DNA of 64,000 bases from Paragordius varius. Taxonomy: Eukaryota > Animalia > Nematomorpha. A program made the translations under genes and the position numbers. The DNA is taken from NCBI GenBank assembly GCA_964247055.1, contig OZ176050.1, forward strand, positions 5,208,001 through 5,272,000. The letters run 5' to 3'. A model generated the notes under the pieces. The model saw only the letters and a program-made list of their open reading frames with translations. It did not search any database and had not been told where the DNA came from. Shown in pieces: positions 4,298 to 64,000 of the stretch (position 1 is the stretch's first letter; every line of letters begins with the position of its first letter).

Positions 4298-7200
4298 TCA
4301 AGGTTTTCTTGATCCAGGATGTCTATTAGTAAAATGTCGGCGTGTAAAACGACTATGCTGGATTGTAGAATTGACATTGTTAGCCAATTTATTTATCGAG
4401 GGTTTTTCAACAGTCTTTTTAGCATCATTTGATATAAGCTTTTTTGCCGTCTTATTACAATTTTGGCCTGTATTATTATTACTAGTACCTACATTCTCGT
4501 CTCTAAAAATCGATTGTTTTAACTGGTATTGCAATTTTCGTGGTGATGACCGAATACTAGGTGTGGGTAAAATAGGTTGTTCAGATACTATAGTATTATC
4601 GATTTTGTTGGTGATTTTCGAAATATTTTTCTTATCATCAAGTGTTGAGGGATGATGGATAGATGTAATAGATGATGATTTAATTTCATCATATTCCTCT
4701 TTAGAAGGTTTTCCATTATTTTTATCCGAAATTAATAATTGGGTCGATTGACATGGCAAATTTGGGCCTATTATGGAAAAATTAATGTTAAACCAAAAGT
4801 TTAGGTATTGTTTTTTGGTCGAAAATGGTTTTTTGATCAAATAGTTTTAACTTTTTAATTTACAAAAAAAGTGTTTATGTTCGAAAATAGAAGTAAAACT
4901 TACAATCTGCGGAATTCGCATCAGAAAGAAGACAAATTGAAAGCTTGTTTGATAATCCATTTATATGTTTCCCTCCTTTAAGATAAAACAATGTTAAAAT
5001 ATAAAATATTGTGCGGTTTTAAAAGTGTAAAAATATTACGTCTCAATGCGGTGTTAGCGTCCCGATCATTCATGTATGTTATAAGCGCATACCTAGAAAG
5101 AAAAAAAATAAGATGTGTAAAATGGCCAATAAGATTGGAAATGATTTTAGAATTTAATACTTCAAAAAATAATATATATATATATATAATATACTCCTTT
5201 TCCCGCTTAACAATTTGTATTGGGCCAAAACGTTTAAACATATTTTTTAATTCATTTTCAGATGCATGAGGTTCAATAGGGCCAAGTTTTATTGTATGCC
5301 GAGGATTGACTGAATCAGACTCCTTAAAAAAATAGTTATAATTAAATTACATATTTTTATATATAATGGATAATAGATCTTGTAAAAGATAATACCGCAT
5401 TGTTGTCAATTTTAGCATTGTCAATGGGTTTTGGCAAAAACCCCGATAAAGTTCTATAATAAAAATATAAATATATTGTTGTCGAGTTTGTCAAACAAAT
5501 ATAAATAAGTAAACTAAGTATATGCTTAAATACTGTTTAGATTTGACAATAGACATTGTGGGTTTAACGTCAGGTTTGTAAATTAGTTCATCCATAGTTA
5601 TATCAGTCCAAGGTGACATTGATTTTACAAAACTCCTATTTTGATTTGCAACATTGTTGCTGTTGTAAATGGATTTTGGAACATTTTGATTTTCATTTAT
5701 ATCTTTATTTTTGTGTAGGGTTTTATTATTTTGTTGAGTAAAGTTACCATTGAATTCATTCGTAAATTCGGATTTCACAATATTGCACATTGTAGAGGGT
5801 ATTGATTGGAAACTTTGATTTTTTATAGATGAGGTTTGAATGATTGTGTTAAAACTTTGATTATCTGACAATTGGAATGAAGATGTATTTATCATGGGGG
5901 AAGAAACACGCCTAATATTATTTTGCGGCGGTAATTCCTTCTTCCCAACCCTATGGACATCATTTAAAACATTATTAGGAGGCTGTTTAACACTCGCACT
6001 TTTTTTGGTATGATTACTTTTTGAATTGTGATTAGATTTGATATTATTACTATTATTGTTATTATTAGAGTAAGCAGTGTTGGCAACATATTGATTTTGA
6101 TAATAGGCAGTTGATGTGTAATTATAACTGTCTGTGGCATTATTGCCGTTGGCATCAAACACATAAACGTGGCCTTGACCATCACTTATGGTTGTAAAAA
6201 TTTCTTGGTCCGATGAGGTGTCATTTGACAAATGTTTCCTTTCATTCGATAAAAAAGATTCAATTATTTGTGCTTCCTTCATAATCATCTTTCGACTCGT
6301 GGCAGATGAGGTGAATGTGAGAAGCGAGGAAAAATTTGAAAAAAAATTGTTACTGGAAGGACATGTTTTATCTCCAACCTGACCATTACCATTTTGTTGT
6401 GTTGTCACACATTCATTATCACGGATACCATGAGATGGTACAAAACTATAGCGTTCAGAAATGGAGTGACTACTTGAGATTTGACGTTTTCGGTTGTTAT
6501 TATTATTATTGTTATTAGCAGTGGTATTATTGTTGGTGTTTTCATGAGCCAGATTGGATTGATTGCGTTTGGAATCAATATCATTCTTGTTTGTTGTATT
6601 ATCGCCATCAGTTGACTGTGGCAATTTATTTGCCATTTTTATTGGGCGATTGCCTTTCGGTTTACATTTTGTTTTGACATCTTTGCTTTCCGTTTTAGGC
6701 GGCAAATGGGTGTTATTTCTAGATAGCAGAGAAACCAAGTTTTTACCAAAAAAACTTCCAATCATAACGTTTTTATTATTGTGTTTTCCAAATTTGTCAT
6801 TTTTGGCTGAGTTAGAATTCGATGTTAAAATAGGAGAATTTATATGTTCTGGTATACATTCATTTGTTGTATTGTTATGGAATGAAGTTATAAAATGCGG
6901 AAAATTGCGGGTAAAGTTTTGCACATTTGCTTTTATCTTTGAACCAAAAGTATTGAATGAATTAACATCTGTCAAAGTATTAATATTGCAAAAATTTTGT
7001 TCAGGGTCACCGTTAATATTAGCTGCACAGTAATCGTGGTCATTTATATGAAGGGCTTGAAGGTTGGATGAGGGAGAAAAGCAGGGCATACGATTTTGAA
7101 TCGAAGTTTTTACAGCTAAATATACATTGTGTTTAAATATTATATAGCGAGCGCCCTAAAAATATTTTATATATAATGTTTTTTAAGGCAAATTTCTAAC

Positions 7201-8627
7201 CAAATGATTAAAATTATGGAATAAATATTCAATTTTTACCTTCAACTTCAGTAATCAGGTCATGAGAGTCTGGTTTATTATCTGTAATGACCGATTTTAT
7301 AGTATTGTTACAAGAGGTATAAATATCGTGGGTTGAGGAAGACAAATAATTTTCCAAATCCAATTGTAACGAAACAATATCTTCGTCCTTTTGATGGTGA
7401 TTGTGAAAGGATGCATTATCATCTAAAATTACAAAAAAATTAATAAAAAATATTTATTCATTATGCTTTTAACTTCAAATGATAAAAACTTATAATTAAT
7501 TTATGCTAAAAAGGATGTAATCAAATGTAATCAAAAGTTAAATATTTAAATAATATGTGAATTACCGAAATGCATTAACAGTTGGGATATATCAAAAGCG
7601 GAATCTAAATTTTCATAATAAAAATAATAATATACAGTGTCAAAAACAAATAGGTCGATTTTAAGGGTATGTTAAAAAAGTAGTATTACAGGCGTTAATA
7701 TGCGTAAAATCATTTTGAATCCATTTCATATTTTAAATAATTATTATAATGAGAAAAATAATTTTAATATGCTGAATCTACAGGCCATATTTAAATCTAA
7801 TCAAATAAATATATACCGCATTTCGACAAATTAATGGTTAGGTCAGCAGGTAAAATTGAATCAGAAGAATTTTCACCAACGTTGTCATCAAGTTGCTCCC
7901 CTAAAATGGGTGTTTTGTTATGTTTAATCGGTTCGGATATATTTTCATAATTGCCCAATTTTTTTTCTGGAGTTTTGTCTGGTAAGACAGAAATATTCGT
8001 GTCCATGATAGATATGGCTGATGATATATGGACAAGAGAATCGGTATCGATCTAAATTTGAGGATAAAAATACATAAATTTTTATTTACATTATAATTAG
8101 TTATATGTCATTAAATTTTGACATTCATCAAAAAATATTTAAGGCCATAAATTAACCCTATCAGCCAAAAAGCCATCGGATACAATGGACATAATTGAAT
8201 TGGACAAAAAATTATCATGATTGGTGAGCCGAGCAGATTCATAAAATGATTCCTTTTTAATTAATGTTGGACTGGAAGTGGCATAATTTGTGGAAGAAGG
8301 ATTGCTAAATTGTTGATCTGAATTTTCGGTGATCTTAGAGTCGATTACATTTGTTGAATCTTTGTTTTTTAGTTGAGAATTATTTATTATTACGTTATCA
8401 TTTCTATCATTGTAATTATTGGTGTTAAGAAAATTATTAATAGTGGTTATTTCATCCCCATCGTGGGATAAATATTGATGTGAGGTATAATCTGGAAAAA
8501 AGACATTATTTCGATCCGCCGAAAAATCCTCCTTTTTAATGGCTGAGCCGACGAACCCGTTAGTGAAAGGATTCAGAGGTGAAGTTGAAAGGAGTATATC
8601 ATTTAAGGCCATGGACGCTTCTTCATC
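4298..8627 (-). CDS. PGC-1 family coactivator-like protein (PPARGC1/PPRC1/Spargel-like), multi-exon, Asn/Ser-rich; 5' end uncertain
   Basis: About 10 phase-compatible GT-AG exons joining the ORFs 8139-8612, 7797-8006, 5491-7089 and 4298-4840. HCF-binding-type motif DHDYC at 7027-7041. The spliced C-terminal RRM (5322 to ~4904) reads HTIKLGPIEPHASENELKNMFKRFGPIQIVKREKEYALITYMNDRDANTALRRGKHING, resembling the PGC-1 RRM (YGFITY...DAFAALENG). A possible first exon starts at ATG 8755. Confidence 0.65.
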
Positions 8628-8769
8628 CTAAAGTAGTATATTAAATTATACATTTACTAACGTTTGATAATTAAAAAAATTTAACAAACAGAAACGTTTA
8701 ACATAAATATTAGCGGATCTGGAGCGGTTTCAAAAAATATCTGAAATCGAACCATGTGATAAAAATAAC

Positions 8770-17959: not shown

Positions 17960-18874
17960 ATGTCTCTATTAGCAATTAAAGATTTTATTAATTTATGGTT
18001 TCCATTTTTAACATCCTATTGGAAATATATTCCCTCTATATTGCTTCCAATCGTTTTAAGCGTAAACTTTTACAAACCGTCACTGGCAAAAAATAAGGTT
18101 AATGAAAACAGCGTTCCAGAAAATATAAATGGCCATATTCCTTACAATTACCATTTACCCAAAATTTTACCAAAAAAATATCCGGAAAACGGGAAAAAAC
18201 AAACAAGTATCATGGCAGAAATTGGATGCAAACGCTCATTCAAATTCTATGAACTTATGAATGCTCGTCGAAGCGTTCGCCATTTTAGTCATTCACCAAT
18301 CCCCCATATTGATATTGTCAAAAATTGTATCAGAACTGCCGGAACTAGTCCTAGTGGTGCCCATTGTCAACCATGGACATTTGTCCTTGTTTCATGCGCT
18401 AAAACTAAGCATTCTATCAGGGAAATAATTGAAGAGGAGGAAGAACTTAATTACAAGCGCCGTATGGGACAACGTTGGGTCGATGATTTGAAATTCGTGG
18501 ACACGGATTGGAATAAACCCTATCTAGAGGACGCTCCTTACCTAATCTTAGTGTTTAAACAAATATATGGCATGGCCAATGAAGGAAAAAGTAGTGAAGA
18601 AAAAATGCAAAAAAAAGAGGACAAAATTCCATATTACTATCAGGAAATGAGTGTATGCATTGCTTGTGGCTTACTTATTGCTGCACTCCATAATGCCGGA
18701 CTAGTGACAGTTACTACGACTCCGTTAAACTGTGGCCCTAAAATAAAAAATCTCCTTCAACGCCCTGACAATGAAAAATTGTTGATTCTTTTACCGGTGG
18801 GTTATCCAGCAAAAAACGCGACAGTCCCAAACATACAACGAAAACAATTGGATGACATTTGCATACATATTTAG
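17960..18874 (+). CDS. IYD: Iodotyrosine deiodinase (nitroreductase fold, FMN-dependent), single exon with N-terminal hydrophobic anchor
   Basis: ORF 17933-18874 (likely ATG at 17960). Motifs [93 protein letters not shown] closely match animal IYD. Confidence 0.95.
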
Positions 18875-45095: not shown

Positions 45096-48000
45096 TGGAA
45101 ATTCCCGGAGATACATGATTTAGTAATGCACAAAATCCTCTAAATCGAATAATTCTTGAACCATTTGACGAATGTTACAATTTCAAAAATTATGTCAAGC
45201 ACATAGAAAGGGTACTCGCGGCCAGGGATATTCCTGTCACGGATTCCAATATAAAAAAATTATTTTTAGCTTTCGGTGGTATTAAAATTTTGAACAAAAT
45301 TGAAAATATTCTATATCCTGATACCATCGAAGATTTGGAATGGCCGAAAATCTATATAATTGTAGTTCAAATCTATGCCCCAGACAAAAGTCTATGGGTG
45401 AATAGATGTGCATTTTATCGTATTCGTCGTGATAATGAATCTATTCTTTCGTATTTAGAACGTTTGAAAATTTTGGCCGACAATTCTGGATTTGATTCGG
45501 ACATTTCTAACAAAATCAGGGATATATTTTTGATTGGATTAAATCAACCCAGATTAGAAAGAGAACTCCACATAAAATATCCGCTCGGTAAGTTAGATGA
45601 CAAACTACTGACACTACAAATGTTGGTCGATATGGCTTTAAGTTTTGAGAAAGCCGATAATCTTCCCTCGCAAATCAATAAGCTTAAAGTGGATAGATCC
45701 AGAAATGTAAAACCTCATGGAAGTTTTAACAAGGGCCATTATAACAATAATAATTATAAAAACAATAAGAATAATGATGTCCGGGATAATAATGATACTA
45801 TAAATTGCCGAAATTGTGGATCACTGCATGTGAGAAACAAGTGTCCGGCTTGGGGCAAAACGTGCTACAATTGCAACATAAATAACCACTTTAGTTCAAT
45901 GTGCAAAACAAAGTTGGTGAGAAATTTGGATCAAATTAGATCTATAAAAGCGGGCACTACCGCTAAAATAAAAGTGAAGATCAACAATAATATGATAGAT
46001 ATGATTTTCGATACCGGCTGACTGCTGTCTCATAAGTCAACAAATATGGAAGCAGATCGGTAGCCCTAAGTTAACGTGGTCCGATCAAATAACCACGTAT
46101 GATAATAATAAGATAACAATCTTAGGGAAAACTATGGTCACTGTGACGTTGTACAATGAAAAGAAAACGTTACCATGTATCGTAACTAAAAGCAATTTTG
46201 ATCCAATTTTTGGATTACCTTGGATAAAAGCGTACAAGCTACCTTTTCCAAAAGGTGTAATCAATAATATAAATTCTAATGAGAAGATGGAGCTGACCAA
46301 AATATTTCCAAAACTATTCTCAAAGGAACTTGGTTGTCACAACGGCAATCCGATCAAAAAATTTTTGACACCGGATGCAAAACCAAAAGCTTTTCCATGC
46401 CGTAGAGTTCCTCTACCATTGCAACCATTGGTAGAAAATGAATTGAATAGATTGTTAGATTTGGGGATTATAGAACCAATAGACCCAACAACAACTGAGA
46501 TATCTTGGGCAACCCCAACGGTCAACGTGTTAAAATCCAATGGGGAGGCTCGTATCTGCGCCGATTTTCGTGTCACAATCAATCCTTATCTATCAAAAGA
46601 TTCTCATATCATTCCGACATTTAATCATTTATTGGGTAAAATCGGAAATGGACATTCATTTTCAGTTTTGGATCTCAAGGATGCCTACTTACAACTACCG
46701 GTTGATAAAGAATGCTCTAATATTCTGACAATTACAACACACAGAGGTTACTTTACGTATAAACGATTACCTTTCGGGCTCACAAATGCTCCAATGATAT
46801 TTCAACGAGTTATGGATCAAATTCTGGATGATTGCACAGGCGTTGGTGCTTATCTGGTTGATGTTCTGGTAACCGGCAATACAGACACTCAACACAAAGC
46901 AAATCTTGAGCATGTGTTGGAGAAACTTGACAGGCCGGATTCCGTTTGCAACCGGATAAAATGAAATTCTTCCAGGAAAAAGTATCCTACATGGGATACG
47001 AAATATCTAAAAGAGGTATTAAGCCAACGGATGAAAAAATCAAGGCTATTTTGAAATGTCCTGTTCCAAAGGACAAAACAACATTACGGTCCTTTTTAGG
47101 ACTATTAAACTTTCATGAAAAATTTATTCCAAGATTACATTCAGTCATAAGTGATCTGCACACTTTAACTGGAAACAAAATGCCATGGAAATGGGAGAAT
47201 ATTCATGATAAACAATTTGCACTGTCAAAACAACTAATAGCAAATTTTGTGGAACTGATTCCGTACAATCCGCAATTGCCATTATTGATTGAGACCGATG
47301 CTTCAAACGAAGGTTTGGGTGCAATCCTTTTCCATGTAACCGAAGATGGCAAGCGGCCAATCTCTTTCGCATTCAGGAAATGTTTAAATTCTGAAAAACA
47401 TTATTCGACGATCGAAAGAGAGGCCAAGGCGATTTTGTTCGCGGTAAACAAATTTCACCCTTTCATATATGGGAGATCTTTTAAAATATTGACTGATCAT
47501 AAACCACTGATTAAATTATTTGGGGAAGACCGGAACTTAACCGGAGTCACTAATATAAAATTATTACGTTGGATTTATAAAATATCGGGGTATGATTATC
47601 CCATTCATTTCAATAAAGAAGTTCAAAATTTAGCTGATCCCCTATCAAGATTAGCAATTGACGATCCTGAAATGGATGATGATCATGCTGTAGCTGAAAA
47701 AATTCGGTTCTTATCTATGAACGATTTGAACATTAATAAAAAAAATGTATTAGTTCAGTCCAATAAGGACCCGGTGATAAAAAAATTAAAAATTGCATTA
47801 AATTCCAACAATTGGGATGATCCAGATCTAAAAAATTATCAATCACATCGCAACGCTATCCAAGCATCGTATGGTTAAGTTTATTTGGAGGATAGACTCA
47901 TTGTTCCTAGATCCATGCAAAATGAAGTCCTAAAATACTTGCACACTGGACACCCAGGGATAAGTACCATGAAGTCCCTTGCGCGCCACAGTGTATATTG

Positions 48001-48921
48001 GCCAGACTTGGACCAAAGTATTGAATTGCTTGCGAAGACATGTGACTCATGTCAAAGATACAAGCCCAATGTCCAGGAAAATCCAACATACAAATGGAAT
48101 TTCAACACCGCCGTCTGGGAAAGAATACACATAGATATTGCTGGTCCCATTGATAATTTCTACTGGCTGGTAACAATTGACAGCTCATCCAGATGGCTGG
48201 AAGTTAATTTATTGAAACAAGTTACGAGCAGGTCTGTTTTAAATTACTTAGAACAATTGTTTGCGAGATATGGTTTTCCTAAAATAATAGTAAGTGATAA
48301 TGCATCGTATTTTGTATCGCACGATTTTGATGAAAGGCTTAAACACTTAAACATCAAACATGTTACGTCGAGGCCGTATCACCCACGAACGAATGGGTTG
48401 GTAGAAAGATCTATTTACACATTGAAAACTAAATATAAAGCTACGAAGAGGGCTGACATCTCTCCGCAAGAAGCAATGAATACATTTTGTGGAGCTATCG
48501 GCAAGCAATTCATAGTGCAACGAGAGCAACACCGTGCTCATTATTCTTAAAAAGAGAATTGTTAGGTCCCTTGTCATGGTTAAAGACAATACCATCAGAT
48601 TTTATGGATAATACTAGAGCCCCCTTACGAGAATTTGACGTTGATGATGCTATTCTGATTAAAAATGAAACAGCAGAGGGGTGGCGGAAAGGAAAAGTAA
48701 TTGAAAGATCAGGATTATTATCTTACAAGACTGATGACGGTAGCAAAATTCAGCGAAAACACGCCGATCAGCTACAGAAGTCTGTTATGTCACAACCCGC
48801 CCTTGACATTGTACCAGAGATCCCAGTTACGGAAGCTGTGGAGTCGGAGTGTAACTTGACAGAAGTACAAAGCCGTTATCCTCGCCGGGAACGAAAAGCT
48901 CCGGATCGTCTTTCTTATTAA
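45096..48921 (+). pseudogene. gag-pol pseudogene (zinc knuckles, protease, RT, RNase H, integrase)
   Basis: Early in-frame TGA after MEIPGDT; CRNCGSLH..CPAWGKTCYNCNINNHFSSMC; protease FDTG broken by frameshift at ~46020; RT LDLKDAYLQ and RLPFG with catalytic YLDD changed to YLVD; RNase H IETDAS...TDHKPL; integrase HTGHPG...CDSC, HIDIAGP, VSDNA, NGLVER; further frameshifts near 46950, 47880, 48500. Confidence 0.92.
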
Positions 48922-49270: not shown

Positions 49271-50229
49271 CTGTTTACCCAGAAGCCAATATTTAAAAAA
49301 CGCAAGACTAAATTTTTTGCCTTTTAACAGAGAATAACTCGAATCCTCAGTAAATTTAACGGTTTCATACCCTGGGCAAAAAATTATGGTTTTTTGAAAA
49401 AAATGGCATTTTACGGGGTGAACGGGTAAAAAGAGAGCCTAAATTAAAAAAGTAAGCCGACTATGTCCGGCGCAATCGAAAAAAAGTAAAAAAAAAATAT
49501 ATTTGAAATCGAATGGTCCAAGACGTTTTCCGGAAAATTGTCTCAAAGACACGATTTTTGTGGACTTCTGTTTTCAAAAAAACCCGTTTTTTACACGGGG
49601 TGGGCCTGAACTGGGGGCCTAATAGGGCGAAGCTATTCTCGAGCATTCATTAATAATTATATTTTTTTGACATTTGGATTTGAATGAGTCGATTGATTTT
49701 CCGATCACAAAGCTAACATTTTCCATTTTTATAAATATATAGAATTTAATGATCGGAATCGAAAGGCTGGTATAAACATTCTTTCCTAACCAGAAGATTT
49801 TATGATATATTTATCTACGATGATTGTTATTTTTCTTTATAACAATAATTTTACAAGTTAAAAGACATTTTTTGTTAAATTCTATTTTTATCAATCGCGA
49901 CCCCATAATTTTTGATACGCGACCTCAAATGGGTTCGCGACCCATAGTCAAAGAAGCCCTGCTCTAAATGTCTAACACAATGTAACATTTATATGCGTTT
50001 TAAGGTTACAGCTTAATCACCGCACTTATTTAACGAACAAGGGGCTCGGCACTTTTTATTCTTATTTATTATTCTGGGTATACTCATAATATTATCGAAT
50101 TTTCATAAAACCTATCATTCATAAGAAATTTTAAATGATTATTATTTTTGCCAAGAACTAAAAAACCATATACCATAGAGGCAAACTATTGATCTTTATC
50201 GGTATCACTGAGAAATTAATGTATGTACT

Positions 50230-52680
50230 AACTTACCTTGGGCAAAAAAATACAATCAAAAAATTATTTTTGTGGACTTTGATTTTTTTGAAAAAAATGG
50301 CATTTTACGGGAGTAGCGGGTAAAAAGAGGGCCTAAATAAAAAAAGTGAGTCGACTATGTTCGGCGCGATCAAAAATAAGTAAACAAAAATCATATTTGA
50401 AATCGAATAGTCCAACACTTTCTCCGAAAAATTGTCTCTACCTGTTTTTTACACGGGGTAAGCCCGAACTGGGGGCCTTTTTCAAAAAAGGGCGAAGCTA
50501 TTGTCGGGGCATTCATTAATGATTATATTTTTTCGATGTTTGGATTTGATTGGGTTCACCGGTTTTCCGGAAACAGATCACGAAGCCACATGATGAATCA
50601 GTTTTTAGCGGGTAACTCCTTACCCAGCAGCTATCATCAAAGAAACGCTTGACTAAAATTTTTTCCTTTTAACAGGGATTACGTAGAATCCATATTGAAT
50701 TTTTACGGTCTCATACCTAGGGCGAAAAATAGATTTAAAAAATTATTTTTGTGGACTTTTTGAAAAAAATGGCATTTTACGGGGGGAGCGGGTAAAAAGA
50801 GGGCCTAAATTAAAAAAGCGAGACGACTATGTTCGGCGCAATCGAAAATAAGTAAACAAAAATCATATTTGAAATTGAATGATCCAACACGTTCTCCAGA
50901 AAATTGTCTCAAAGACACGATTTTTGTGGAATTCTGTTTTCAAAAAAAACCGTTTTTCACACGGGGTGGGCCCGAACTGGGGGCCTATTTCAAAAAAAGG
51001 CAAAGCTATTGTCGGGGCATTCATTAATGATTATATTTTTTCGATCGGAAAACGGGTATACACATTCAAATCAAAACGTACAAAAAATATCATTAATGAT
51101 TGCCCCGGCAATAGCTTCGCCCTTTTCTTAAATTAGGTCCCCAGTTCGGGCCCAACCAGTGTAAAAAACGTTTTTTTTGAAAAGAAGTTCAAAAAATCGT
51201 GTCTTTGAGACAAATGTTTTGAACCATTCGTTTTTAAATATGATTTTTTTACTTTTTTTCGATTGCGCCGAACATAGTCGGGATCGCTTTAAAAAAACTC
51301 AGAACACAAAAATAATTTTTTGACTCTATTTTCACCCAAGGTATGAGACCTTAAAAATTTAATGAGGATTCCAGATATTCCCTGTTAAAAGGCAAAAATT
51401 TTAATTGCGCGTTTCTTATATTGCCTACTGGGTAAGGAGATGCCCGCTAAAAACTGCCCCCTCATATCGAAATAGCGTGCCTTTGGGACTAAATTTCAGA
51501 AAACCCATCAGGCTATATCAATAGGTGCTTTAAATATTACCCGTAACAAGGCAAAATATGTCGTACGGCTTTTTAAATTTACCGTTAATTAGCCCCTTAC
51601 CCTGAAAAATGCACCATAGAATGATTTTTTAGTTTTGAGGCAATTTTTCCGAAAACTAATGAGAGCATATGGAATCAATCATAATTCCAAGGCGCCTTTT
51701 TTGTTACAGCCTGTGGGTAGGGGCTCCCTGCCTAAAACTAAGCCACCTAGAAGTTAATTTTCAGAAAATTTATCAGGCCATATAAGTTTAATAAGGGCTT
51801 AAAATATTCCCGTAAAAAGGCAAAAATTTTAGTAAAGCGGTTTTGTTGACTTACCCTTCAATTAGGCCCTTGTCCTGAAAAATGCGCCACCATAGAATGA
51901 ATTTTTGGTTGAGGCATTTTTTCGAAAATCCCACGAGAGCTTTTGGAATTAATCATGACTCCAGGTATTGCCCGAATTTAGGCAAAAATTTTAATCGAGC
52001 GTTTTTTTGTTTCGCCCCTGGTTAGGGGGCTACCAGGGTAAAACTACGTCCCATATCGATGCAGCATGCCTTTGGAGCCAAATTTCAGAGAACCTATGAG
52101 TTTAATATATGGAATTCATATTAATTCCATACATTCCCCATATAAAGGCAAATATTTTGCCCAGCGCCTTTTTATACCTGCCGCCACTATATAGAAATTG
52201 CTTGTTTTGGAGCTAAGATACAGAAAATAAGGCATATGAGCTCATATTAAAAGCTTAAAATATTACTCGTAACTAGGTAAAAAAAGTCAGGCGTTTTATA
52301 TAAGTCGTTAATTTGGAGCCTTTATGTCCTAAAAATACGCCATCATATAACGATTATTTTGTGTTGAGGTATTTTTTCGAGACCATGAGACGATGGTATC
52401 AAAGATGATTCTAAATATTTGCCCTATAAAGGCAAAGAATTTAACTCAGCACTTTTCCACAAAGGTCTATGGGTAAAGGTCTACCGGTTTGAAAATGAGA
52501 CGCCATACAAAAATGGCGTGGTTTTGGAGCTAATTTTAAAAAAACTTAAGAAGCCATACGAGTTCAGTTAGACACATTTCTGGGGAATTTGTATAATATC
52601 ATTCTTTCCTTTAAAAAGTGACCACAAATTGCTTTTTATATCCCTTGATCTCAGCTGTGTGAACACAATTTCAAAATAGA
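50230..52680. mobile_element. Helitron family A module arrays in head-to-head orientation
   Basis: Reverse ~500-bp units 50230-51045, inversion junction ~51045-51090, then forward diverged modules to ~52680; termini missing. Confidence 0.75.
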
Positions 52681-53750: not shown

Positions 53751-54563
53751 AGTAATTTATGCGAACTCCGGTAAAATATAATACGCATATAGAAAAAACG
53801 AGCGATTATGAATTATAAAGTTTTCAGCTTGACCCAATCGAAATTAACAGCCAATTTTATAGCTAATTATTTGAATGTAAAATCGGTTTAATAGCTGGCG
53901 ATCCCGACGAGTTTTTAATATTTACTTTTATTCCCTATTATTATTTATTTTATTTTTACCGTTAAAACCAATTCCAAATATTTTTCTCTATAGTGATACC
54001 GATGTTTTAGATGAGGCTCTTAAAAATGTAGGAATATCTTTAACCTAATTTATAATTAAATATATGATATTTGTTGTGTACACAGAGCATAAAATTGATG
54101 GTTGTAGCAATAACCTGATGTAATATATATTCAAATACAAAATGTATAAATCATCCTGGTGCTTTTGGGTTTAGGCGCGAGGAGTATGATAGTAATTACA
54201 ACTTTTGTGGCATTGCTATATCATAAAATGGTCAAATTTGCACATATTTTTTTAAATAATTTTATTTAAGGAGGCTAAACGTTTTATTCAAAAATATCAC
54301 TTTTATATAATTAATTATATAAATAAAAGGCAAACCAATTTTTTTTTTAAACAGCCTCAACTACCGAAATTTATCAAAAAACTATAGAGTTGATATAGGA
54401 TTAATATAGTTATATACAAAACTTTACGATACATATATTCTCTATATTACAGTATAATATATAATTAAGTTGTTCGATAATATTTTTTTTGAATTTTATA
54501 ACGCGATAAATTACTCAAAATATTTACTTTTATAGTTAATTTGTATACAGTTCCTTTTTACAA

Positions 54564-56020
54564 ATGGCAGACGCTGAATATCAAAACGATCAAACTTATG
54601 AGGATGCTAACCAAAACCAATCACAATACGATCAAATGGAACAGGAAAATATAAATGGGTCTGGTGATAACCCTACTGGTAAAAAGGAGACCGTTAATAA
54701 TACAAAAAGAGATGACGACGAAAGGTAAAATTTTATGTGTATGTTTAGAAAATTATTTCTTGGAGGAATAAGTTGGGAAACGACAGAAAGTTTTTTTTGT
54801 TTTTTATAATATATAGATGATTTAAGAAGTTATCTTACCAAATATGGGAATGTCATTGACCTTGTTATTAAAACCGATCCTAACACTGGAAAATCCAGGG
54901 GATTTGGATTTGTTTTATTTGATAGTTCGGACAGTGTGGAAAATGTAAGACTGTTATTTAATTTTAGCTACTTGCTGCTTGTCCACATTCTCTTAACGGA
55001 AAACAAATAGATGTTAAACGTGCCAAAAGCCGTCCAGGTAGAGAGATGATGCGTAAAGTGTTTGTTGGAGGCATGGATCCGAACACAACTGAAGATGATT
55101 TAAAAGAGGCATTCGCTAGGTTTGGAGAGGTTAGTTACATTTATATAGATACTTGTTAAATTTTTTGTATTAATATTTTATATTATCATTTATTTTTAAT
55201 ATAATCAAATAATTTAAATTAGGTCGAAAGAATAGAGCAACCTTTTGACAAAGTTCGGAACCAAAAACGAAATTTCTGTTTTCTTACCTTCCCTACCCCT
55301 GATATTGTAGTTGAAATAACAAAACTTCATAAGATTACCGTTAGAGGTAAAGAATGTGATGTTAAAAAAGCCACCCCTTCGTCCAAAAATATACCCAATC
55401 AAAATGGTATGTTTTAATTTTTTTAAAATTTCAAATATTTATGGGAAATGTTGTAAATGGCATTTTTTTAGCTGGTGGGTACAATGCTGGTTTCGGAGCT
55501 CCTGGTGCTGCCCAATGGCCTAGTGGATATAATTATTACCCAGGTATTTATTTTATTTAAAAAAATATGTTTACCCATTCTGCGAGCTCTTTTTGATATT
55601 CTTTAGATGCAAACTACGGTAATTATGGTGGCTACGATTACTCTGGTTACTACCAAGGTTTCGGTAATTATTTAACTTTTTGGTGTTTTTTACAAATTTT
55701 ATAAATTTATTCTTAATAGGTGGTTATCCGGATTATTATCAAGGCTATTATCCTCCAGCAGCCCAACAAAGTATGTAAAATACAGTTAAGATTGTAAATG
55801 TTTTTAACAGTAAATGTTAAATTTTAGTTGAATGTAACTTAAAGTATTCGGTTATAATATTTATGAGAAAAAATACAAAATAAACATAAGAGAGGTGTAT
55901 TTTCTAAAATTTTAATTTGATATTTTAGTGCCACCTGTGTTTCCACATCAAACGAATGGCGGTAAAGCAAAGAGGGGAGGTATGGCTGCCAGTCATGCTT
56001 ATCACCCTTATCAACGCTAG
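54564..56020 (+). CDS. hnRNP A/B/D-type (squid-like) RNA-binding protein: two RRMs plus Gly/Tyr-rich tail, 9 coding exons
   Basis: Exons 54564-54724, 54749-54789, 54817-54944, 54968-55129, 55223-55406, 55472-55543, 55607-55663, 55720-55770, 55929-56020. Spliced: [53 protein letters not shown]...[14 protein letters not shown]...[36 protein letters not shown]...KRNFCFLTF; C-terminal HAYHPYQR (PY-NLS-like). Confidence 0.95.
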
Positions 56021-56577
56021 AATAAGGTAAAAAATTGTGAAAACAGTTTTGTTCATTATATAATATTGAATTGTTTATTTTAAAAGCATTTTTTCTTTTT
56101 TATATTAACTTAGGTGTTGTAAATGCAAACCCTTCTTAACCATTAGTTGTTCAACTTTCAAAAATATAAATTTAGTATAACTCTCCTCTATTAATATAGT
56201 AACTATGTGGGATGATTGAAGAATAATAATAATTATATTGCATTGTTTTTTCATTGTATTTATTGATAATATCCTTTTTTATTCAACAAAAATTTATAAA
56301 TTTTGTGTTTGTACTTGATTTTATCATATTCCCATTTTCATCAATATCCATACATTTTTATTAAATGGTCTTATATATATAACCGATAATTGTAAATAAA
56401 TGAATTTATACCTTAATTTTTAAAGTAATAATATATCGCGTTTATTTAAAGAAAATTGAATTTTCTCCATCTCATGCAAGTCATCCGTTTTACATTTTTC
56501 GGAAAAGTTAGTATTAATGGATAAATGGATATTTATTCATGTAATTTATTATAGATTTGGAATATATAATTTACAGG

Positions 56578-59500
56578 AATTCACACCGTCAATCTGGATG
56601 TTTACCTATTACATCTTATCACTTTATAAGGTAACAATCAATAATAGTGAAACTCATAAACATTAAACAATTGTTTATTGTTTTTAATTGTTAGTTTGTA
56701 AAAAAAGTTACTTAACGTTTCCAAAATTAATTAAATATCGCTTATCCCATTAACTATGTGCCGATTTCAGAATCAATTTACTTTTGTTAGCCAGATAATT
56801 TTATTTCTTACAAGGTTACATTTACCTTATTTCCTTATCAAAATATCATGATGCTTTATAATACCTAATGTTATAATGCATTTAGGTCTAACAACATTTT
56901 TGGGGACAATTTGAGTGAGTCCCAACCATTCATATCATACGTGGCTTATATTAGAAAAAGTGATTCATTACCTGGAATCTCTAATTTAAAAAATCGTTTA
57001 TATGTGTTCAACACTGAAGATTGGCACATGAATGTATGGAAAAATGCCACTATAAATGAACAAAGGCGAATAAGAAAGGCCTTTAGAACTATTTTTTCCC
57101 AAAAAACGTCATTTAAATATCGGGAAATGATATATCAGCTATTGCCACCCTCACCACCCAAAGAAAGTTTAAATTAAAAACAAGCTTTATAAATATCCAT
57201 TTAATGATACTTTTTCTCTATTTAAACGCATCACTTGATTTGATATCACAAGTTCCATTTGTTATTTATATATTTTACTGTTAAAAAGTGAGATGGGAAT
57301 GTAATCCATTTTTTTCGGGTGTGGATTTTTGTGGGCCCAATGGAGATTGTATTGAATCGGAAAATGAACAATACTCTAGTACTACGGAAACGCAGTACAT
57401 AACAACACTGAACAATGTTACTTCATTCCTTAAGTCAACTCGAATCACTGCATCGCAGGCAGAAGATTTTTTTAAATGCGTATGCAATGATGGATGGCAG
57501 GGTAGATTTTGTCAGGATGGTAAGATTTGGATTGCATTAAGTATTTTAAAAACCATATTTTCACGCCTCCATACAGATTGAAGTTTTTTCCTAATTTTAA
57601 TCTTAAAATATATACCCAAGTTATGGTCCATTTTTTCCAATTTTCAGGTATTTAGGATATTTTGGGATTGTAAAATGAGGTTTTAACGTATATTAACCAC
57701 GATTAATTGTTATCCACGTAATAATTTTAATACAAACGTTTGTTTGTTTTTTCAGTTAGTCAAAGTTTATATTGAAGTTGCAAATTTACTTTTTCAATAT
57801 ATCATACGAATTGATCCACTATCATGCTTATATCATATTAAACAATATTTACTATTATTTTTTGGCTTAAATGATATCTCTGTGATTATTTATAAAATGA
57901 CTATATCAATTTCAATATACCCATATAACTTGAATTTACCACGAATACCCAGCATCACTTCCTATTTAATAAAATAAATCATATAAAATTGTTTAATATT
58001 CCCGTTAACAACTGTAACTTCTTTTGCATTGATGGCACATCGAACATTATGCATGGATGTTTTTTTAATTTAAGTAATTACGAGAGTATTTTTCTGGCCT
58101 TTCTACAATAATAATAATTAAAACTTCAGTAAACTTAAATTTTGACCAAAACTGTTTTACATTTTTAATAAATATATAAAATTGGGTTGTTTTCACAATT
58201 CCAAATTTTATAATCATATGATTTAGGAATTCACTACGTTTACTTCCAGTCATATGAGTTGGGTAGATACGAAACCTTTTATTACAGCTTAGAACTAGTT
58301 TTTAGGGAGGGTCAGTATTCCAAATAATTTTCATGCAAAGGGTTTTAAAAATTTTGATCATCACGGCCGGTGTTGCCAAAAAATAGGAACCAGTCTTAAT
58401 AAAGTTATAATATTTCTTTTTATTAATCATATAAGAACAGTTATACTCAAATTTATGAGCAGCCTTGATCTAAACTTTAAATTTGAGCTGTACTTTTTCA
58501 AATATAAAACTCTTTGAGTTCAAATTAAAATTTTATGCATATAATCAACAACCTGTTGTTTGTGGTTATGCTCTTAAAGTTGTATTCCTCCTTTTGTTTC
58601 GGGTTAAAAACGTTGAAACATTTTGCTCGCAAAACAATTTTGACGTGTGATAAGTATTTTTATTGTTTCAAGGCGCTTGCAACATATAATACCACAATTA
58701 TTGTATACCTGTTTTACATTCAGATCATACTCTAAATAAGTAGTATCATTAATAGTATGAATAATTCAGGCTGGGCCACGATTGACCAACCTAACCTATA
58801 CAGTGAGCATTAAATACAGCATTATATCCGCAGTCTTCAAAGCTATATATTAAAAAATATTTTATGCGGTCTGCGAAAATTGCAAAAGGTTCATCATATT
58901 AATAGGTAATCAGGTCTTTCTTTATATTCTATTTACTTAAGATATATTTTGAAGACTTCATTTAATTAAAATATATAAACTTTAAATAATTATCCGAGTT
59001 TACTTATAAAAGTTTGCAAAATGATCTGGTTTAGTTCTCAAAATAAAATGGGATACCTGCATATAAGTGACAAAAAAAAGGTGTTTGATGACATAAAAAT
59101 CCAAATCAACGATTATAAAATCCTTACTTGGTTAATAATTCAGTTGGAATCATAAAGAAATATGAATTGATCTGGTTCAACCTCTTATTATTAGTTAAAA
59201 GTTCTGTTTAAATTACAAAGGTATGAATGGTTCCTGTTTTAAAAGCATTAGTGTTTGAACCGTAAGCGCTTTCGAATACATTTAAATCAAGCTTAAATTT
59301 GTATTTGTCTTAATCGTATTCAAATTTATATATCGATAAAATTTCCATGCATGTAATACAATGTATAAAACGTGTATTTTACATATTTAATAGGAATAAA
59401 TTAAAATTGGTTGAATTTCGATTCTATACTCATTTACCTACAGCCAATGAGCAAATATAGATTTCCTATATTTTCATAATGACTAAAAATAAACCTATAA

Positions 59501-60443
59501 TAACTTAATTTAAAATCTTAATCGGCTAGCACATAAACAAAAAAACATTTCATATCAGTCTCTTTTAAAGTTTTGGTTTTGCTTGCATTTTAAGAGATGA
59601 TAATTCATTATAGGTGGAGAAATTCTGACTGATTATATGCCATTTTGAAATTAGTTCCTGTTTGCCAGATAAAATATCACTGTATAAAATACCGTATTGG
59701 TCCGATTTAAGCAATTACACTGAAACTGCTAATATATTTGATTTCAACTCGAAATTAGAAATAACTAGGAATGGGAAAGATTATGGTTTTTAAATTTTAA
59801 AAAAATATATTCCAGTCCTTTGTCTACAAACCGGGCCCAGTTTTTTTCGTAAAATCTAAATTCTTAGTGTATAACCCGAGTTCAAATTAGTTTAAAAATC
59901 GGGTTTGGAATTTATCTTTCAAACTTTGGAAATTAAGTTGATATAAAGAATATTTATTTCTAAATTGTAATAAAAATATATTGCCAATATATTTTTACAC
60001 TATATTATATGTATGGTTTTCTATAAAAACAGTAGAACTCAAACCGCCCAAACTGTTATATAATTTGTATCGGTATTATATATGGTGCACGGCCCTTGAG
60101 ACAAGATAAAGATTTTTTGCGACTTTTTAAATTTTTTGGTAAGGGTACCACTGTACTAAAACATATAAAAATATCAGTATTGTACTGTATGATTCATTTT
60201 AAAATGTTTGGATTAGGATAATCATTTAATACGGCAAAAGTAAAAAATTATAATTTTATAAAGTGTTAAGTAATATATCGTGGTCGTCATTTGTAATAAA
60301 AAATATCTTCAAATGATTTTAGATATCAATGAATGTCACATGGAATCTATATGCATGAATGGTGCAAGATGCATTAATTATGAGCCTCCAAAAAAATTTG
60401 AATGTATTTGTCTCCCTAATACATTTGGAAAAAATTGTCAATA
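56578..60443 (+). CDS. EGF-like repeat protein, partial model (possibly Notch-ligand related); continues downstream
   Basis: Exon ~57286-57519 RWECNPFFSGVDFCGPNGDC...FKCVCNDGWQGRFCQD joins exon ~60324-60443 DINECHMESICMNGARCIN...FECICLPNTFGKNCQ (calcium-binding EGF signature). Upstream exons at ~56578-57170 are less certain. Confidence 0.75.
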
Positions 60444-60999
60444 TAGTAATTTTTTCCATTTTAATAAGGATTAAATATACCAATAAGTTTATTTCGTTCG
60501 ATTATTTTTTCTGTTTTATCATTTTTTTGTTTATTTATCTATTAAATTAAGTTTTTAACTTTTCTGGAAAGCTGTTTTTATTTAAACTTGATTTGGCTTT
60601 ATCACTATGAAATGATTATAACTAGACTTACATTAGATATTTAAACCTGATTGACGAAACAAATATTTTTTTTAAAAAGATAATCATACTTTTTTGAAGA
60701 ATGATTCTCTACATAATATATTTTCCGTTTTGAAATATATTAATAAGAGTGTTACCAATTTACATATCTTACATTTTGATTCCCACAAAATAGGTTATGA
60801 TGAAAAATTAGTGTTTCAAAATTCTTGGTGGTCTAGAAAAATATTGGTCTTTTAATTTTACATTTTGTTATTTAACAAGAATCTCAATTTGATTCAAAAA
60901 ATTGACATTTATTTCTTTTTAGCAGGGATATATCGCAAAAATGTCAAAACTTTATATTTTACGCGTTTTTCGTATACTACACTGTTGGCAAAAAAAGGT

Positions 61000-62647: not shown

Positions 62648-64000
62648 TATATATATATATATATATATATATCAACCTTTAAGGGTTTTTTCTCCCAACA
62701 AGGAGGTAACCCTTCGGATAGAATTACGCCATGAGCAACGGTCCTGTGCATCATCCATTTTCAGGTTTAAAATAGCCAGATCGTTTTCCACAATAGAAAG
62801 CCAACTTTGTAATGGACGTCCTTTACGATTTCGCAAACTTGTAGAAAAATTGACCATGCGGTATAGCCAACTTTCATGTGGGCGTCGGTGAACATGTCCC
62901 GCAAATCTCAGTCGATTTGTGCGCAAACAATCGATAAGGGGAGTCATTTGTAGGACAGTATATGGATCAAATTTATTATTGTAATTATAGAGGTTTGGGT
63001 TTGTAGCATAAAGTATAGTTTTTAGAATTCTCCTTTCCGCTTGTTGTAACTTTAGTGAATTAGTTTTGGTTAAAGCCATAGCTTCTGTTGCGTAAATTAG
63101 AACGGGTCGTATGGTGGTGGTGTACATAGTCGATTTGGATTTGAATGAGATGTATTTATTGTTTATGATACTTTTGAGTTGGTGGTATTTTGACCAGGCG
63201 TTTTTTATACGGTTATTGATGGTTGGTTAAAGGCCCCCACCAGCGCTTATAATGTCACCCAAATATGTGAAACTTTGTACTGTTTCAAAAGGTTCTTCAT
63301 TACGTACACTTTGTGGAGGCTTAGTTGGGTTGGGCGTGGTGCAATTGCTGCATATAAAATCGTGATGTAATTTTAGCGATTTCAACTGAGAGCATTTTTT
63401 GTGGACCCATTTTTTACATTTGAGGCATTGGATTGCGTTAGTTTCATATTGAGCAGGGCCATTTAATGGGATTGTATTTATTATTATCGTTCATTAATTT
63501 TGTTTTTGATACATTTACCTTAAGTCCAAACATCTCTAGCCGTTCTTTCCACCTCGCAAGATTTGTCTTTAATTGCACTTCACTGTTTGCCATTAATACC
63601 AAGTCGTCGGCGTAAAGAATGTTGTATGGTAAGCCTTGCTCTAAGGGTTTAGAGATTTCATCCATAATAGTTATAAACAAGAACGGGCTTAAGAGCGAGC
63701 CTTGATGCAGCCCGGAGTTAATTGAGAGTGTGTCGGAGTGCCCTACGCTTGTCGCCACCTGAGCTTTGCACTCGGTATATAATGCCATTATTGATTTAAC
63801 CATCCATTCGTCAATGCCTTTGTTTCGTAGGGCCCATGGGATTAGAGTTCGGGATACCGAATCAAATGCCTTTTCGAGGTCGATAAAGGCATAAAATAAG
63901 GGGCTATTTCGAAGGTGTGCTTGTTGAAGTTGTCTTAAGATGAAAATGGCGTCTGTGGTTCCTTTGTTGGGTAAGAAACCACACTGCATTTCATTTATAT
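62648..64000 (-). mobile_element. RTE-clade non-LTR retrotransposon 3' part (degenerate), with (TA)n tail
   Basis: RT motifs QCGFLPNKGTTDAIF, AFIDLEKAFDSV, GLHQGSLLSPFLF, LYADDLVL, GLKVNVSKTK; thumb FTYLG; C-terminal RLRFAGHVHRR, RKGRP..W typical of RTE; in-frame stop and frameshift between ORFs; stop at 62672 followed directly by a TA microsatellite. Confidence 0.92.

What the first reader, a model, noticed from the sequence alone, without database searches (positions are those of the whole stretch)
54725..54967. Three ultra-short (24, 27 and 23 nt) GT-AG introns in a conserved hnRNP gene: an animal spliceosome working on micro-introns
Seen: GTAAAATTTTATGTGTATGTTTAG (54725-54748, 24 nt), GTTTTTTTTGTTTTTTATAATATATAG (54790-54816, 27 nt) and GTAAGACTGTTATTTAATTTTAG (54945-54967, 23 nt). 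Retaining the first two gives in-frame TAA stops and the third a frameshift. Removing all three restores the conserved RRM1 ([23 protein letters not shown]...[19 protein letters not shown]) with no extra or missing residues. Established: most animals splice a minimum of roughly 40-60 nt; introns in the 20-30 nt range are known from ciliates, nucleomorphs, microsporidia and dicyemids. Inference: this lineage has a spliceosome able to process micro-introns that leave almost no room for separate branch point and polypyrimidine tract. The same window also holds introns of 0.3-2.8 kb stuffed with TEs, so this is not simply genome miniaturisation. The ORF track missed this gene entirely.
Basis: partly seen in the sequence, partly recalled or inferred. 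Interest (0 to 1): 0.88.

Follow-up and report, generated by a model that had tools for sequence, protein, structure and literature searches.

The report
Three tiny introns in hnRNP gene
A conserved RNA-binding protein gene of an AT-rich animal, most likely a horsehair-worm relative, is interrupted by three introns of only 23-27 bases at sites where other animals carry introns of 33 to 2,700 bases; this would add a third animal lineage with introns under 30 bases, though no RNA could be examined.

Summary
Segments 54725-54748 (24 nt), 54790-54816 (27 nt) and 54945-54967 (23 nt) are GT-AG bounded. Retaining them gives TAA, TAA and a frameshift. Removing them yields a 9-exon, 315-aa hnRNP D-like/Squid-like protein (54564-56020, + strand).

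The main evidence is comparative. All three lie at the same codon position and phase as introns in three orthologues: Gordionus (hairworm; 39, 554, 76 nt), Intoshia (40, 38, 33 nt) and Limulus (2714, 779, 1573 nt). Exon 2 is 41 nt in all four species. The segments have intron-like composition (11-22% GC against 40% in exons). The other in-frame GT..AG choices either keep a stop or change the protein by three residues.

The protein groups with Gordionus (100/100 support), so the host is probably a nematomorph.

No transcript of this species could be reached, so splicing is inferred, not observed. A 2026 paper reports introns under 30 nt in only two animal groups, myxobolids and Dicyema. I found no report for hairworms.

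This scan has already flagged the same phenomenon on other DNA of this genome.

Verdict: real shrunken spliceosomal introns, a new member of a known kind.

The parts
54564..54724 (+). Exon 1 (ATG at 54564; N-terminal low-complexity region up to the split Arg codon before KLF)
   Evidence: The end of the exon aligns with Gordionus ...[13 protein letters not shown].
54725..54748 (+). Micro-intron 1: 24 nt, phase 2, GTAAAA...TTTAG
   Evidence: Same alignment column and phase as introns of 39 nt (Gordionus), 40 nt (Intoshia) and 2714 nt (Limulus). 21% GC.
54749..54789 (+). Exon 2: 41 nt, encoding the RNP2 motif of RRM1 ([13 protein letters not shown])
   Evidence: Exon 2 is 41 nt in all four species.
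54790..54816 (+). Micro-intron 2: 27 nt, phase 1, GTTTTT...ATATAG
   Evidence: Same column and phase as introns of 554, 38 and 779 nt in the orthologues. 11% GC and 67% T.
54817..54944 (+). Exon 3: 128 nt, the core of RRM1 including RNP1 (RGFGFVLF)
   Evidence: Pfam RRM_1 profile positions 14-53, E 2e-9. The exon is 128 nt in Intoshia and in Gordionus isoform X2.
54945..54967 (+). Micro-intron 3: 23 nt, phase 0, GTAAGA...TTTTAG
   Evidence: Same position and phase as introns of 76/79, 33 and 1573 nt in the orthologues. 22% GC.
54968..55129 (+). Exon 4: 162 nt, covering the end of RRM1, the linker and the start of RRM2
   Evidence: PDB hit to hnRNP D-like, E 3e-16. The exon is 162 nt in Gordionus and Intoshia as well.
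55130..55222 (+). Intron 4: 93 nt, phase 0, ordinary size
   Evidence: The position is shared with Gordionus (103 nt), Intoshia (39 nt) and Limulus (5060 nt).
55223..55406 (+). Exon 5: the rest of RRM2 (RNP1 RNFCFLTF)
55407..55928 (+). Gly/Tyr-rich tail region: introns 5-8 (55407-55471, 55544-55606, 55664-55719, 55771-55928; 65, 63, 56 and 158 nt) with exons 6-8 (55472-55543, 55607-55663, 55720-55770) between them
   Evidence: Introns 5 and 8 coincide in column and phase with Gordionus introns.
55929..56020 (+). Exon 9: conserved C-terminus (...GGKAKRG...YHPYQR) and TAG stop at 56018-56020

Best explanation
The three segments are genuine U2-type (GT-AG) spliceosomal introns. They are ancient bilaterian introns of an hnRNP D-like/Squid-like gene that shrank to 23-27 nt in this lineage, most likely a horsehair-worm (Nematomorpha) relative.

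Inferred mechanism: each is recognised by intron definition using a compact signal set. That set is a GTA/GTT donor, a T-rich body, an A about 6-10 nt upstream of the acceptor (position 17 from the 5' end in all three) serving as branch point, and a nematode-like T-rich TAG acceptor. The pre-mRNA must be spliced at all three to avoid premature stops.

Shown: the sequence features, the restoration of the ORF, positional and phase homology with introns in three other animals, and intron-like composition. Inferred: actual excision in RNA, the identity of the branch point, and the factors involved.
For: The strings and coordinates are as stated. Removing them gives a 315-aa protein with two RRMs. 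Pfam RRM_1 matches the exon pieces, with exon 3 covering profile positions 14-53, and the best PDB hits are hnRNP D-like and A2/B1.

The product is collinear end to end with Gordionus hnRNP D-like at 57.5% identity.

Exact splice mapping of the orthologues puts introns at the same alignment column and phase: column 74 phase 2, column 88 phase 1, columns 131-133 phase 0. This holds in Gordionus (39/554/76 nt), Intoshia (40/38/33 nt) and Limulus (2714/779/1573 nt). The exon sizes match as well: 41 nt in all four species; 128 nt in the window, Intoshia and Gordionus isoform X2 (131 nt in Gordionus isoform X1 and Limulus); and 162 nt in the window, Gordionus and Intoshia (153 nt in Limulus).

The alternative in-frame GT..AG pairs fail.

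Exons are 40% GC. The three segments are 11-22% GC and T-rich, like the five longer introns of the same gene, and all eight introns end in TAG.

The chance of GT and AG at three homology-fixed spacers is about 6e-9.
Against: There is no transcript evidence. Neither this gene nor a second gene of the window has a same-species protein in the 5.8-billion-protein collection.

The donor of intron 2 (aaa|GTTTTT) is weak.

I could not search the rest of the genome for a paralogue.

Only one gene was examined here, and a window-wide search for further micro-introns was too noisy to use.
Confidence: 0.85

Rival explanations
1. The locus is an unexpressed or decaying copy, and the functional hnRNP D-like gene lies elsewhere. 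The short spacers would be remnants of introns collapsing in a dead gene.
For: No expression data could be obtained. The rest of the genome could not be searched.
Against: All nine exons stay open, with intact RNP1 and RNP2 motifs and conserved N- and C-terminal motifs shared with Gordionus. All eight splice-site pairs are canonical. Random deletions in a dead gene would not keep GT-AG and the reading frame at three sites.
Confidence: 0.05
2. The segments are real introns but are often retained on purpose. Each retention creates a premature stop, so the gene could regulate its own level through intron retention coupled to mRNA decay, as many hnRNP and SR genes do.
For: Retention of any of the three gives an early stop. 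Intron 2 has a weak donor. The autoregulation habit of hnRNP genes is general knowledge, not tested here.
Against: Nothing in the sequence specifically indicates regulation. Earlier notes of this scan (unchecked) report similar introns in unrelated housekeeping genes, which argues for a general class rather than a gene-specific switch.
Confidence: 0.07
3. The segments are removed by something other than the spliceosome (IRE1/XBP1-type cleavage, somatic DNA elimination or ribosomal bypass), or they are assembly insertions.
For: Their size (23-27 nt) is similar to the XBP1 unconventional intron. This is a recollection, not a test.
Against: All three sit at conserved spliceosomal intron positions and phases, have GT-AG ends and have the same composition as the neighbouring ordinary introns. 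They are AT-rich with no G+C-rich hairpins. Assembly errors would not produce three GT..AG inserts exactly at ancestral intron sites.
Confidence: 0.02

Closest known systems
Ultra-short introns of the dicyemid Dicyema japonicum
   Same: An animal with GT-AG introns under 30 nt. PMC13644364 names it as the only non-myxozoan animal with such introns. That they sit at conserved intron positions is my recollection of the original dicyemid reports, not checked here.
   Different: In Dicyema nearly all introns are tiny and splice-site motifs are reduced to GTa/AG. Here the 23-27 nt introns share one gene with 56-158 nt introns, two of the three keep a GTAA(A/G) donor, and all keep a T-rich TAG acceptor. 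The host lineage is different, an ecdysozoan close to Gordionus.
Ultra-short introns of myxobolid myxozoans (Henneguya, Thelohanellus, Myxobolus)
   Same: Median intron length is 22-27 nt. [quoted passage not shown]
   Different: The hosts are cnidarian parasites with reduced genomes, and the short class dominates genome-wide. In the window gene only the first three of eight introns are in this class.
Orthologous hnRNP D-like gene of the orthonectid Intoshia linei
   Same: It has the same four 5' intron positions and phases and the same exon sizes of 41, 128 and 162 nt. Its introns are also short.
   Different: The Intoshia introns are 33-40 nt, above the 30-nt mark. The window's are 23-27 nt.
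Orthologous gene of the hairworm Gordionus sp. (G. montsenyensis assembly GCA_954871325.2)
   Same: It is the closest protein (57.5% identity, sister in the tree). It shares intron positions 1-5 and 8, and its first intron is also its shortest.
   Different: Its introns at the three sites are 39, 554 and 76 nt, and none is under 30 nt. The extreme shortening is therefore not shared by this relative at this gene.
Tiny introns of ciliates and nucleomorphs (Paramecium 20-30 nt, Stentor 15-16 nt)
   Same: These are spliceosomal GT-AG introns in the same size range. Stentor is cited in PMC13644364.
   Different: They are unicellular lineages with a uniformly tiny intron population and are unrelated to animals. 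The Paramecium and nucleomorph figures are from my own knowledge.

Membership tests
Ultra-short (<30 nt) spliceosomal introns of animals | Canonical GT...AG boundaries | tested here: met
   All three segments start with GT and end with AG.
Ultra-short (<30 nt) spliceosomal introns of animals | Length below 30 nt, with removal required to keep the reading frame | tested here: met
   The lengths are 24, 27 and 23 nt. Retention gives TAA, TAA and a frameshift.
Ultra-short (<30 nt) spliceosomal introns of animals | Located at intron positions conserved in orthologues of other animals | tested here: met
   Same alignment column and phase in Gordionus, Intoshia and Limulus.
Ultra-short (<30 nt) spliceosomal introns of animals | Excision seen in RNA (junction reads or cDNA) | not testable with these tools
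   No same-species protein or transcript is present in the searchable collections.
Ultra-short (<30 nt) spliceosomal introns of animals | A genome-wide population of such introns (a mode in the length histogram) | tested here: inconclusive
   The window-wide ORF-bridging scan was too noisy: 416 candidates against about 180 in shuffles. A stricter filter recovered two of the three hnRNP introns and several other unvalidated candidates, none convincing by eye. Earlier scan notes report many more elsewhere in the genome, but they are unchecked.
hnRNP A/B-D (hnRNP D-like / Squid) 2xRRM proteins | Two tandem RRM domains with RNP2 and RNP1 motifs | tested here: met
   Pfam RRM_1 matches exons 3, 4 and 5. 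The motifs [14 protein letters not shown] and [14 protein letters not shown] are in the model. The PDB best hit is hnRNP D-like, E 3e-16.
hnRNP A/B-D (hnRNP D-like / Squid) 2xRRM proteins | Gly/Tyr-rich C-terminal tail and orthology to named family members | tested here: met
   The tail GGYNAGFG...YYQGYY...YHPY aligns with Gordionus, Limulus and Intoshia. The nearest named proteins are hnRNP D-like or squid-like. In the tree the window protein is sister to Gordionus hnRNP D-like, 100/100.

The most novel reading that the evidence does not exclude
A horsehair-worm lineage independently evolved a discrete class of 22-28 nt introns concentrated at the 5' ends of genes. These coexist in the same transcripts with ordinary and kilobase-long, transposon-bearing introns in a genome of ordinary size. 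This would be the third origin of sub-30-nt introns in animals and the first not tied to wholesale genome compaction. It would imply a position-dependent or factor-specific recognition route (for example cap-proximal, or an alternative to U2AF) rather than general intron shrinkage.
Probability: 0.45. Interest if true: 0.8.

Novelty: new member of a known kind. Interest (0 to 1): 0.62.

Why it matters
Introns under 30 nt were long held to be impossible in animals. A September 2026 survey of 51 animal genomes found them only in myxobolid cnidarians and one dicyemid, both tiny parasites with reduced genomes (PMC13644364).

A third, ecdysozoan lineage with the same extreme would test whether the animal spliceosome's lower size limit is soft. 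This lineage is a macroscopic worm with an AT-rich, repeat-bearing genome and with normal introns in the same gene. It offers a within-gene contrast (23-27 nt against 56-158 nt) for mapping branch points and finding the factors involved.

There is also a practical consequence. Gene finders and read mappers with minimum-intron settings will break such genes, which may inflate reports of 'missing' conserved genes in these genomes.

Tried and rejected
(1) RNA evidence. I searched for a same-species protein in three ways: with the closest orthologue, with a profile combining that orthologue and the window's exon pieces, and with a second window gene. Nothing closer than Gordionus appeared, so no transcript contig could be fetched.

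(2) The look-up of encoding contigs had no record for P0013, Priapulus P0168, Danio P0256, frog P0214 or Gordionus IYD P0315. No priapulid or vertebrate gene structure was obtained.

(3) A window-wide micro-intron scan by ORF bridging gave 416 candidates against 151-223 in shuffles. A stricter AT-rich filter recovered two of the three hnRNP introns and a handful of unvalidated candidates. I did not use it as evidence.

(4) The Rfam gathering scan of the window found nothing, so no snRNA could be examined here.

(5) The alternative in-frame splice pairs of 12, 18 and 32 nt were rejected.

(6) IRE1-type excision, DNA elimination, translational bypass and assembly error were considered. I rejected them on position, boundary and composition grounds.

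(7) Literature searches for intron length in Nematomorpha found nothing relevant. The Current Biology paper on the Acutogordius and Nectonema genomes is not in the library and could not be checked.

Full report
**What is there.** The region 54,000-56,500 lies in a window of about 29% GC. Each begins with GT and ends with AG. Reading through them gives an immediate TAA, a TAA after six codons, and a frameshift ending in TAG.

Splicing them out, together with five further GT-AG introns of 93, 65, 63, 56 and 158 nt, gives a 948-nt CDS from the ATG at 54564 to the TAG at 56018-56020. It has nine exons and encodes 315 aa.

**What the gene is.**
- Exon pieces match Pfam RRM_1. Exon 3 covers profile positions 14-53 and exon 4 the start of a second RRM.
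- The best solved-structure relatives are hnRNP D-like, hnRNP A2/B1, Hrp1 and hnRNP A1.
- A full-library HMMER search with exon 4, followed by BLASTP of the spliced model, singled out one 322-aa protein that aligns end to end at 57.5% identity.
- That protein is 'heterogeneous nuclear ribonucleoprotein D-like' of Gordionus sp. m RMFG-2023, a horsehair worm.
- Next come squid-like and hnRNP D-like proteins of chelicerates, priapulids and annelids, which align well mainly over the RRMs.
- The model has both RNP2/RNP1 pairs, a Gly/Tyr-rich tail and the conserved ...GGKAKRG...YHPY end.

**Are the three segments introns?** The main test was gene structure in orthologues. I fetched the Gordionus locus (L001), a Limulus locus (L002) and an Intoshia locus (L003). 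I then mapped each annotated protein exactly onto its DNA.

| Site | Alignment column, phase | Window | Gordionus | Intoshia | Limulus |
|---|---|---|---|---|---|
| Intron 1 | 74, phase 2 | 24 nt | 39 nt | 40 nt | 2714 nt |
| Intron 2 | 88, phase 1 | 27 nt | 554 nt | 38 nt | 779 nt |
| Intron 3 | 131-133, phase 0 | 23 nt | 76 nt (79 with an alternative donor) | 33 nt | 1573 nt |
| Intron 4 | 186-187, phase 0 | 93 nt | 103 nt | 39 nt | 5060 nt |

In the four-way alignment all four species carry introns at these positions.

- Exon 2 is 41 nt in all four species.
- Exon 3 is 128 nt in the window, in Intoshia and in Gordionus isoform X2.
- Exon 4 is 162 nt in the window, Gordionus and Intoshia.

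These are therefore old bilaterian introns. In this genome the first three are 23-27 nt long.

The single-residue difference at junction 3 against Gordionus isoform X1 corresponds to a 3-nt alternative donor that Gordionus itself uses. The window product has the same length there as Intoshia and Limulus.

**Further support.**
- Within +-15 nt of each junction, the only other in-frame GT..AG pairs are 12, 18 and 32 nt. They would keep the stop, add three residues, or delete three conserved residues.
- Exons are 40% GC. The three segments are 21, 11 and 22% GC and 48-67% T, like the five longer introns, which together with them average 17% GC.
- All eight introns end in TAG.
- The chance of GT and AG at both ends of three homology-fixed spacers is about 6e-9 from window dinucleotide frequencies.

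**Whose genome.**
- In a maximum-likelihood tree of 26 family members, the window protein is sister to Gordionus with 100/100 support. The path length is 0.78, so this is a fairly deep relative and not the same species.
- The two share motifs outside the RRMs and share intron positions 5 and 8.
- A second gene, an intronless iodotyrosine-deiodinase-like ORF at 17960-18871, also has Gordionus as its best hit. The margin is small because that enzyme is highly conserved.
- The Gordionus assembly is likewise very AT-rich, at 26.9% GC.
- I read the host as probably a nematomorph (about 0.8).
- Neither gene has a same-species entry in the protein collection. Transcript evidence was therefore out of reach.

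**How it most likely works (inferred).** I infer ordinary U2-type splicing by intron definition on a compressed signal set.
- Two of the three donors are good (aag|GTAAAA and aat|GTAAGA). One is weak (aaa|GTTTTT).
- The bodies are T-rich, and the acceptors are TTTAG, TATAG and TTTAG.
- Each intron has an A at position 17 from its 5' end, which is 6-10 nt from the acceptor, in a TRAT/TAAT-like context. This resembles what the 2026 study described for myxobolids and Dicyema, namely A residues whose distance from the AG grows with intron length.
- Three introns are too few to establish this.
- The micro-introns are the first three of eight. Gordionus's shortest intron in this gene is also the first, so there may be a 5' position effect.

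**Comparison with what is known.** PMC13644364 (Mol Biol Evol, September 2026) surveyed 51 animal genomes. It found introns under 30 nt only in myxobolid myxozoans and Dicyema japonicum, and it predicted that more lineages would turn up. It does not mention hairworms.

The two hairworm genome papers I could read never mention introns, and targeted searches found nothing else. The Acutogordius/Nectonema genome paper is not in the library.

On present evidence this is a new member of a known kind. It differs from the known cases in that sub-30-nt introns share a gene with 56-158 nt introns, in a window that also holds retrotransposons and a probable 2.7 kb intron.

**Relation to earlier notes of this scan.** The scan has already flagged 22-28 nt introns on other DNA of this genome several times and suggested a hairworm relative. 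I treated these as leads.
- The hairworm affinity and the pattern 'a longer intron at the same codon in a related hairworm' were re-derived here for this gene.
- The claim that RNA shows such splicing elsewhere was not checked.

**Limits.**
- One gene was examined, and there is no RNA.
- There was no genome-wide histogram, and the window-wide scan was too noisy.
- No snRNA is present in the window.
- No search for paralogues was possible.

Noticed in passing
window 17960-18874 (+): A single uninterrupted ORF of 304 aa with an N-terminal hydrophobic segment and a nitroreductase-family domain. It looks like an iodotyrosine deiodinase. The best hit is the Gordionus protein (57% identity over 81%), followed by vertebrate IYD at about 61-64% over the core. 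It appears intronless here, in a genome where other genes are intron-rich.
   Followed up: partly
window 45290-48921 (+): A run of five adjacent ORFs carrying a zinc knuckle, reverse transcriptase, RNase H, integrase zinc-binding domain and integrase core. This is a Ty3/gypsy-type LTR retrotransposon broken into several frames.
   Followed up: partly
window 63444-63989 (-) and 62672-63127 (-): A reverse-transcriptase ORF (RVT_1, E 8e-25) at the window's end, with a further ORF downstream. This is a second, different retroelement.
   Followed up: no
window 57288-57581 (+) and 60280-60474 (+): Two EGF-type exon candidates (a weak Delta/Jagged-like EGF match and an EGF domain at E 1.5e-4) about 2.7 kb apart on the same strand, just downstream of the hnRNP gene. 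This fits a Notch-ligand-like gene with a kilobase intron. No model was built.
   Followed up: partly
window 49400-51200, both strands: Several short ORFs encode near-identical peptides (…GPQFG.TPCKK…VFETIF…). This indicates a repeated element present in multiple copies here. Similar peptide fragments appear in candidate lists around 28-30 kb and 42-44 kb.
   Followed up: no
L001 6972-7050 (Gordionus orthologue): Gordionus uses two donors 3 nt apart at the intron homologous to micro-intron 3, giving isoforms that differ by one valine. The window's protein corresponds to the shorter form.
   Followed up: yes
window 54725-55928 (+): All eight introns of the gene end in TAG, never CAG. All three micro-introns have an A at position 17 from the 5' end. 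The sample is too small to judge.
   Followed up: partly
window 5491-7089 (-) and 8139-8612 (-): Long Asn/Ser-rich low-complexity ORFs (532 and 157 aa) with no Pfam match. A candidate 24-30 nt GT-AG segment at 8628-8657 would join the second ORF to an upstream open frame. Not validated.
   Followed up: no
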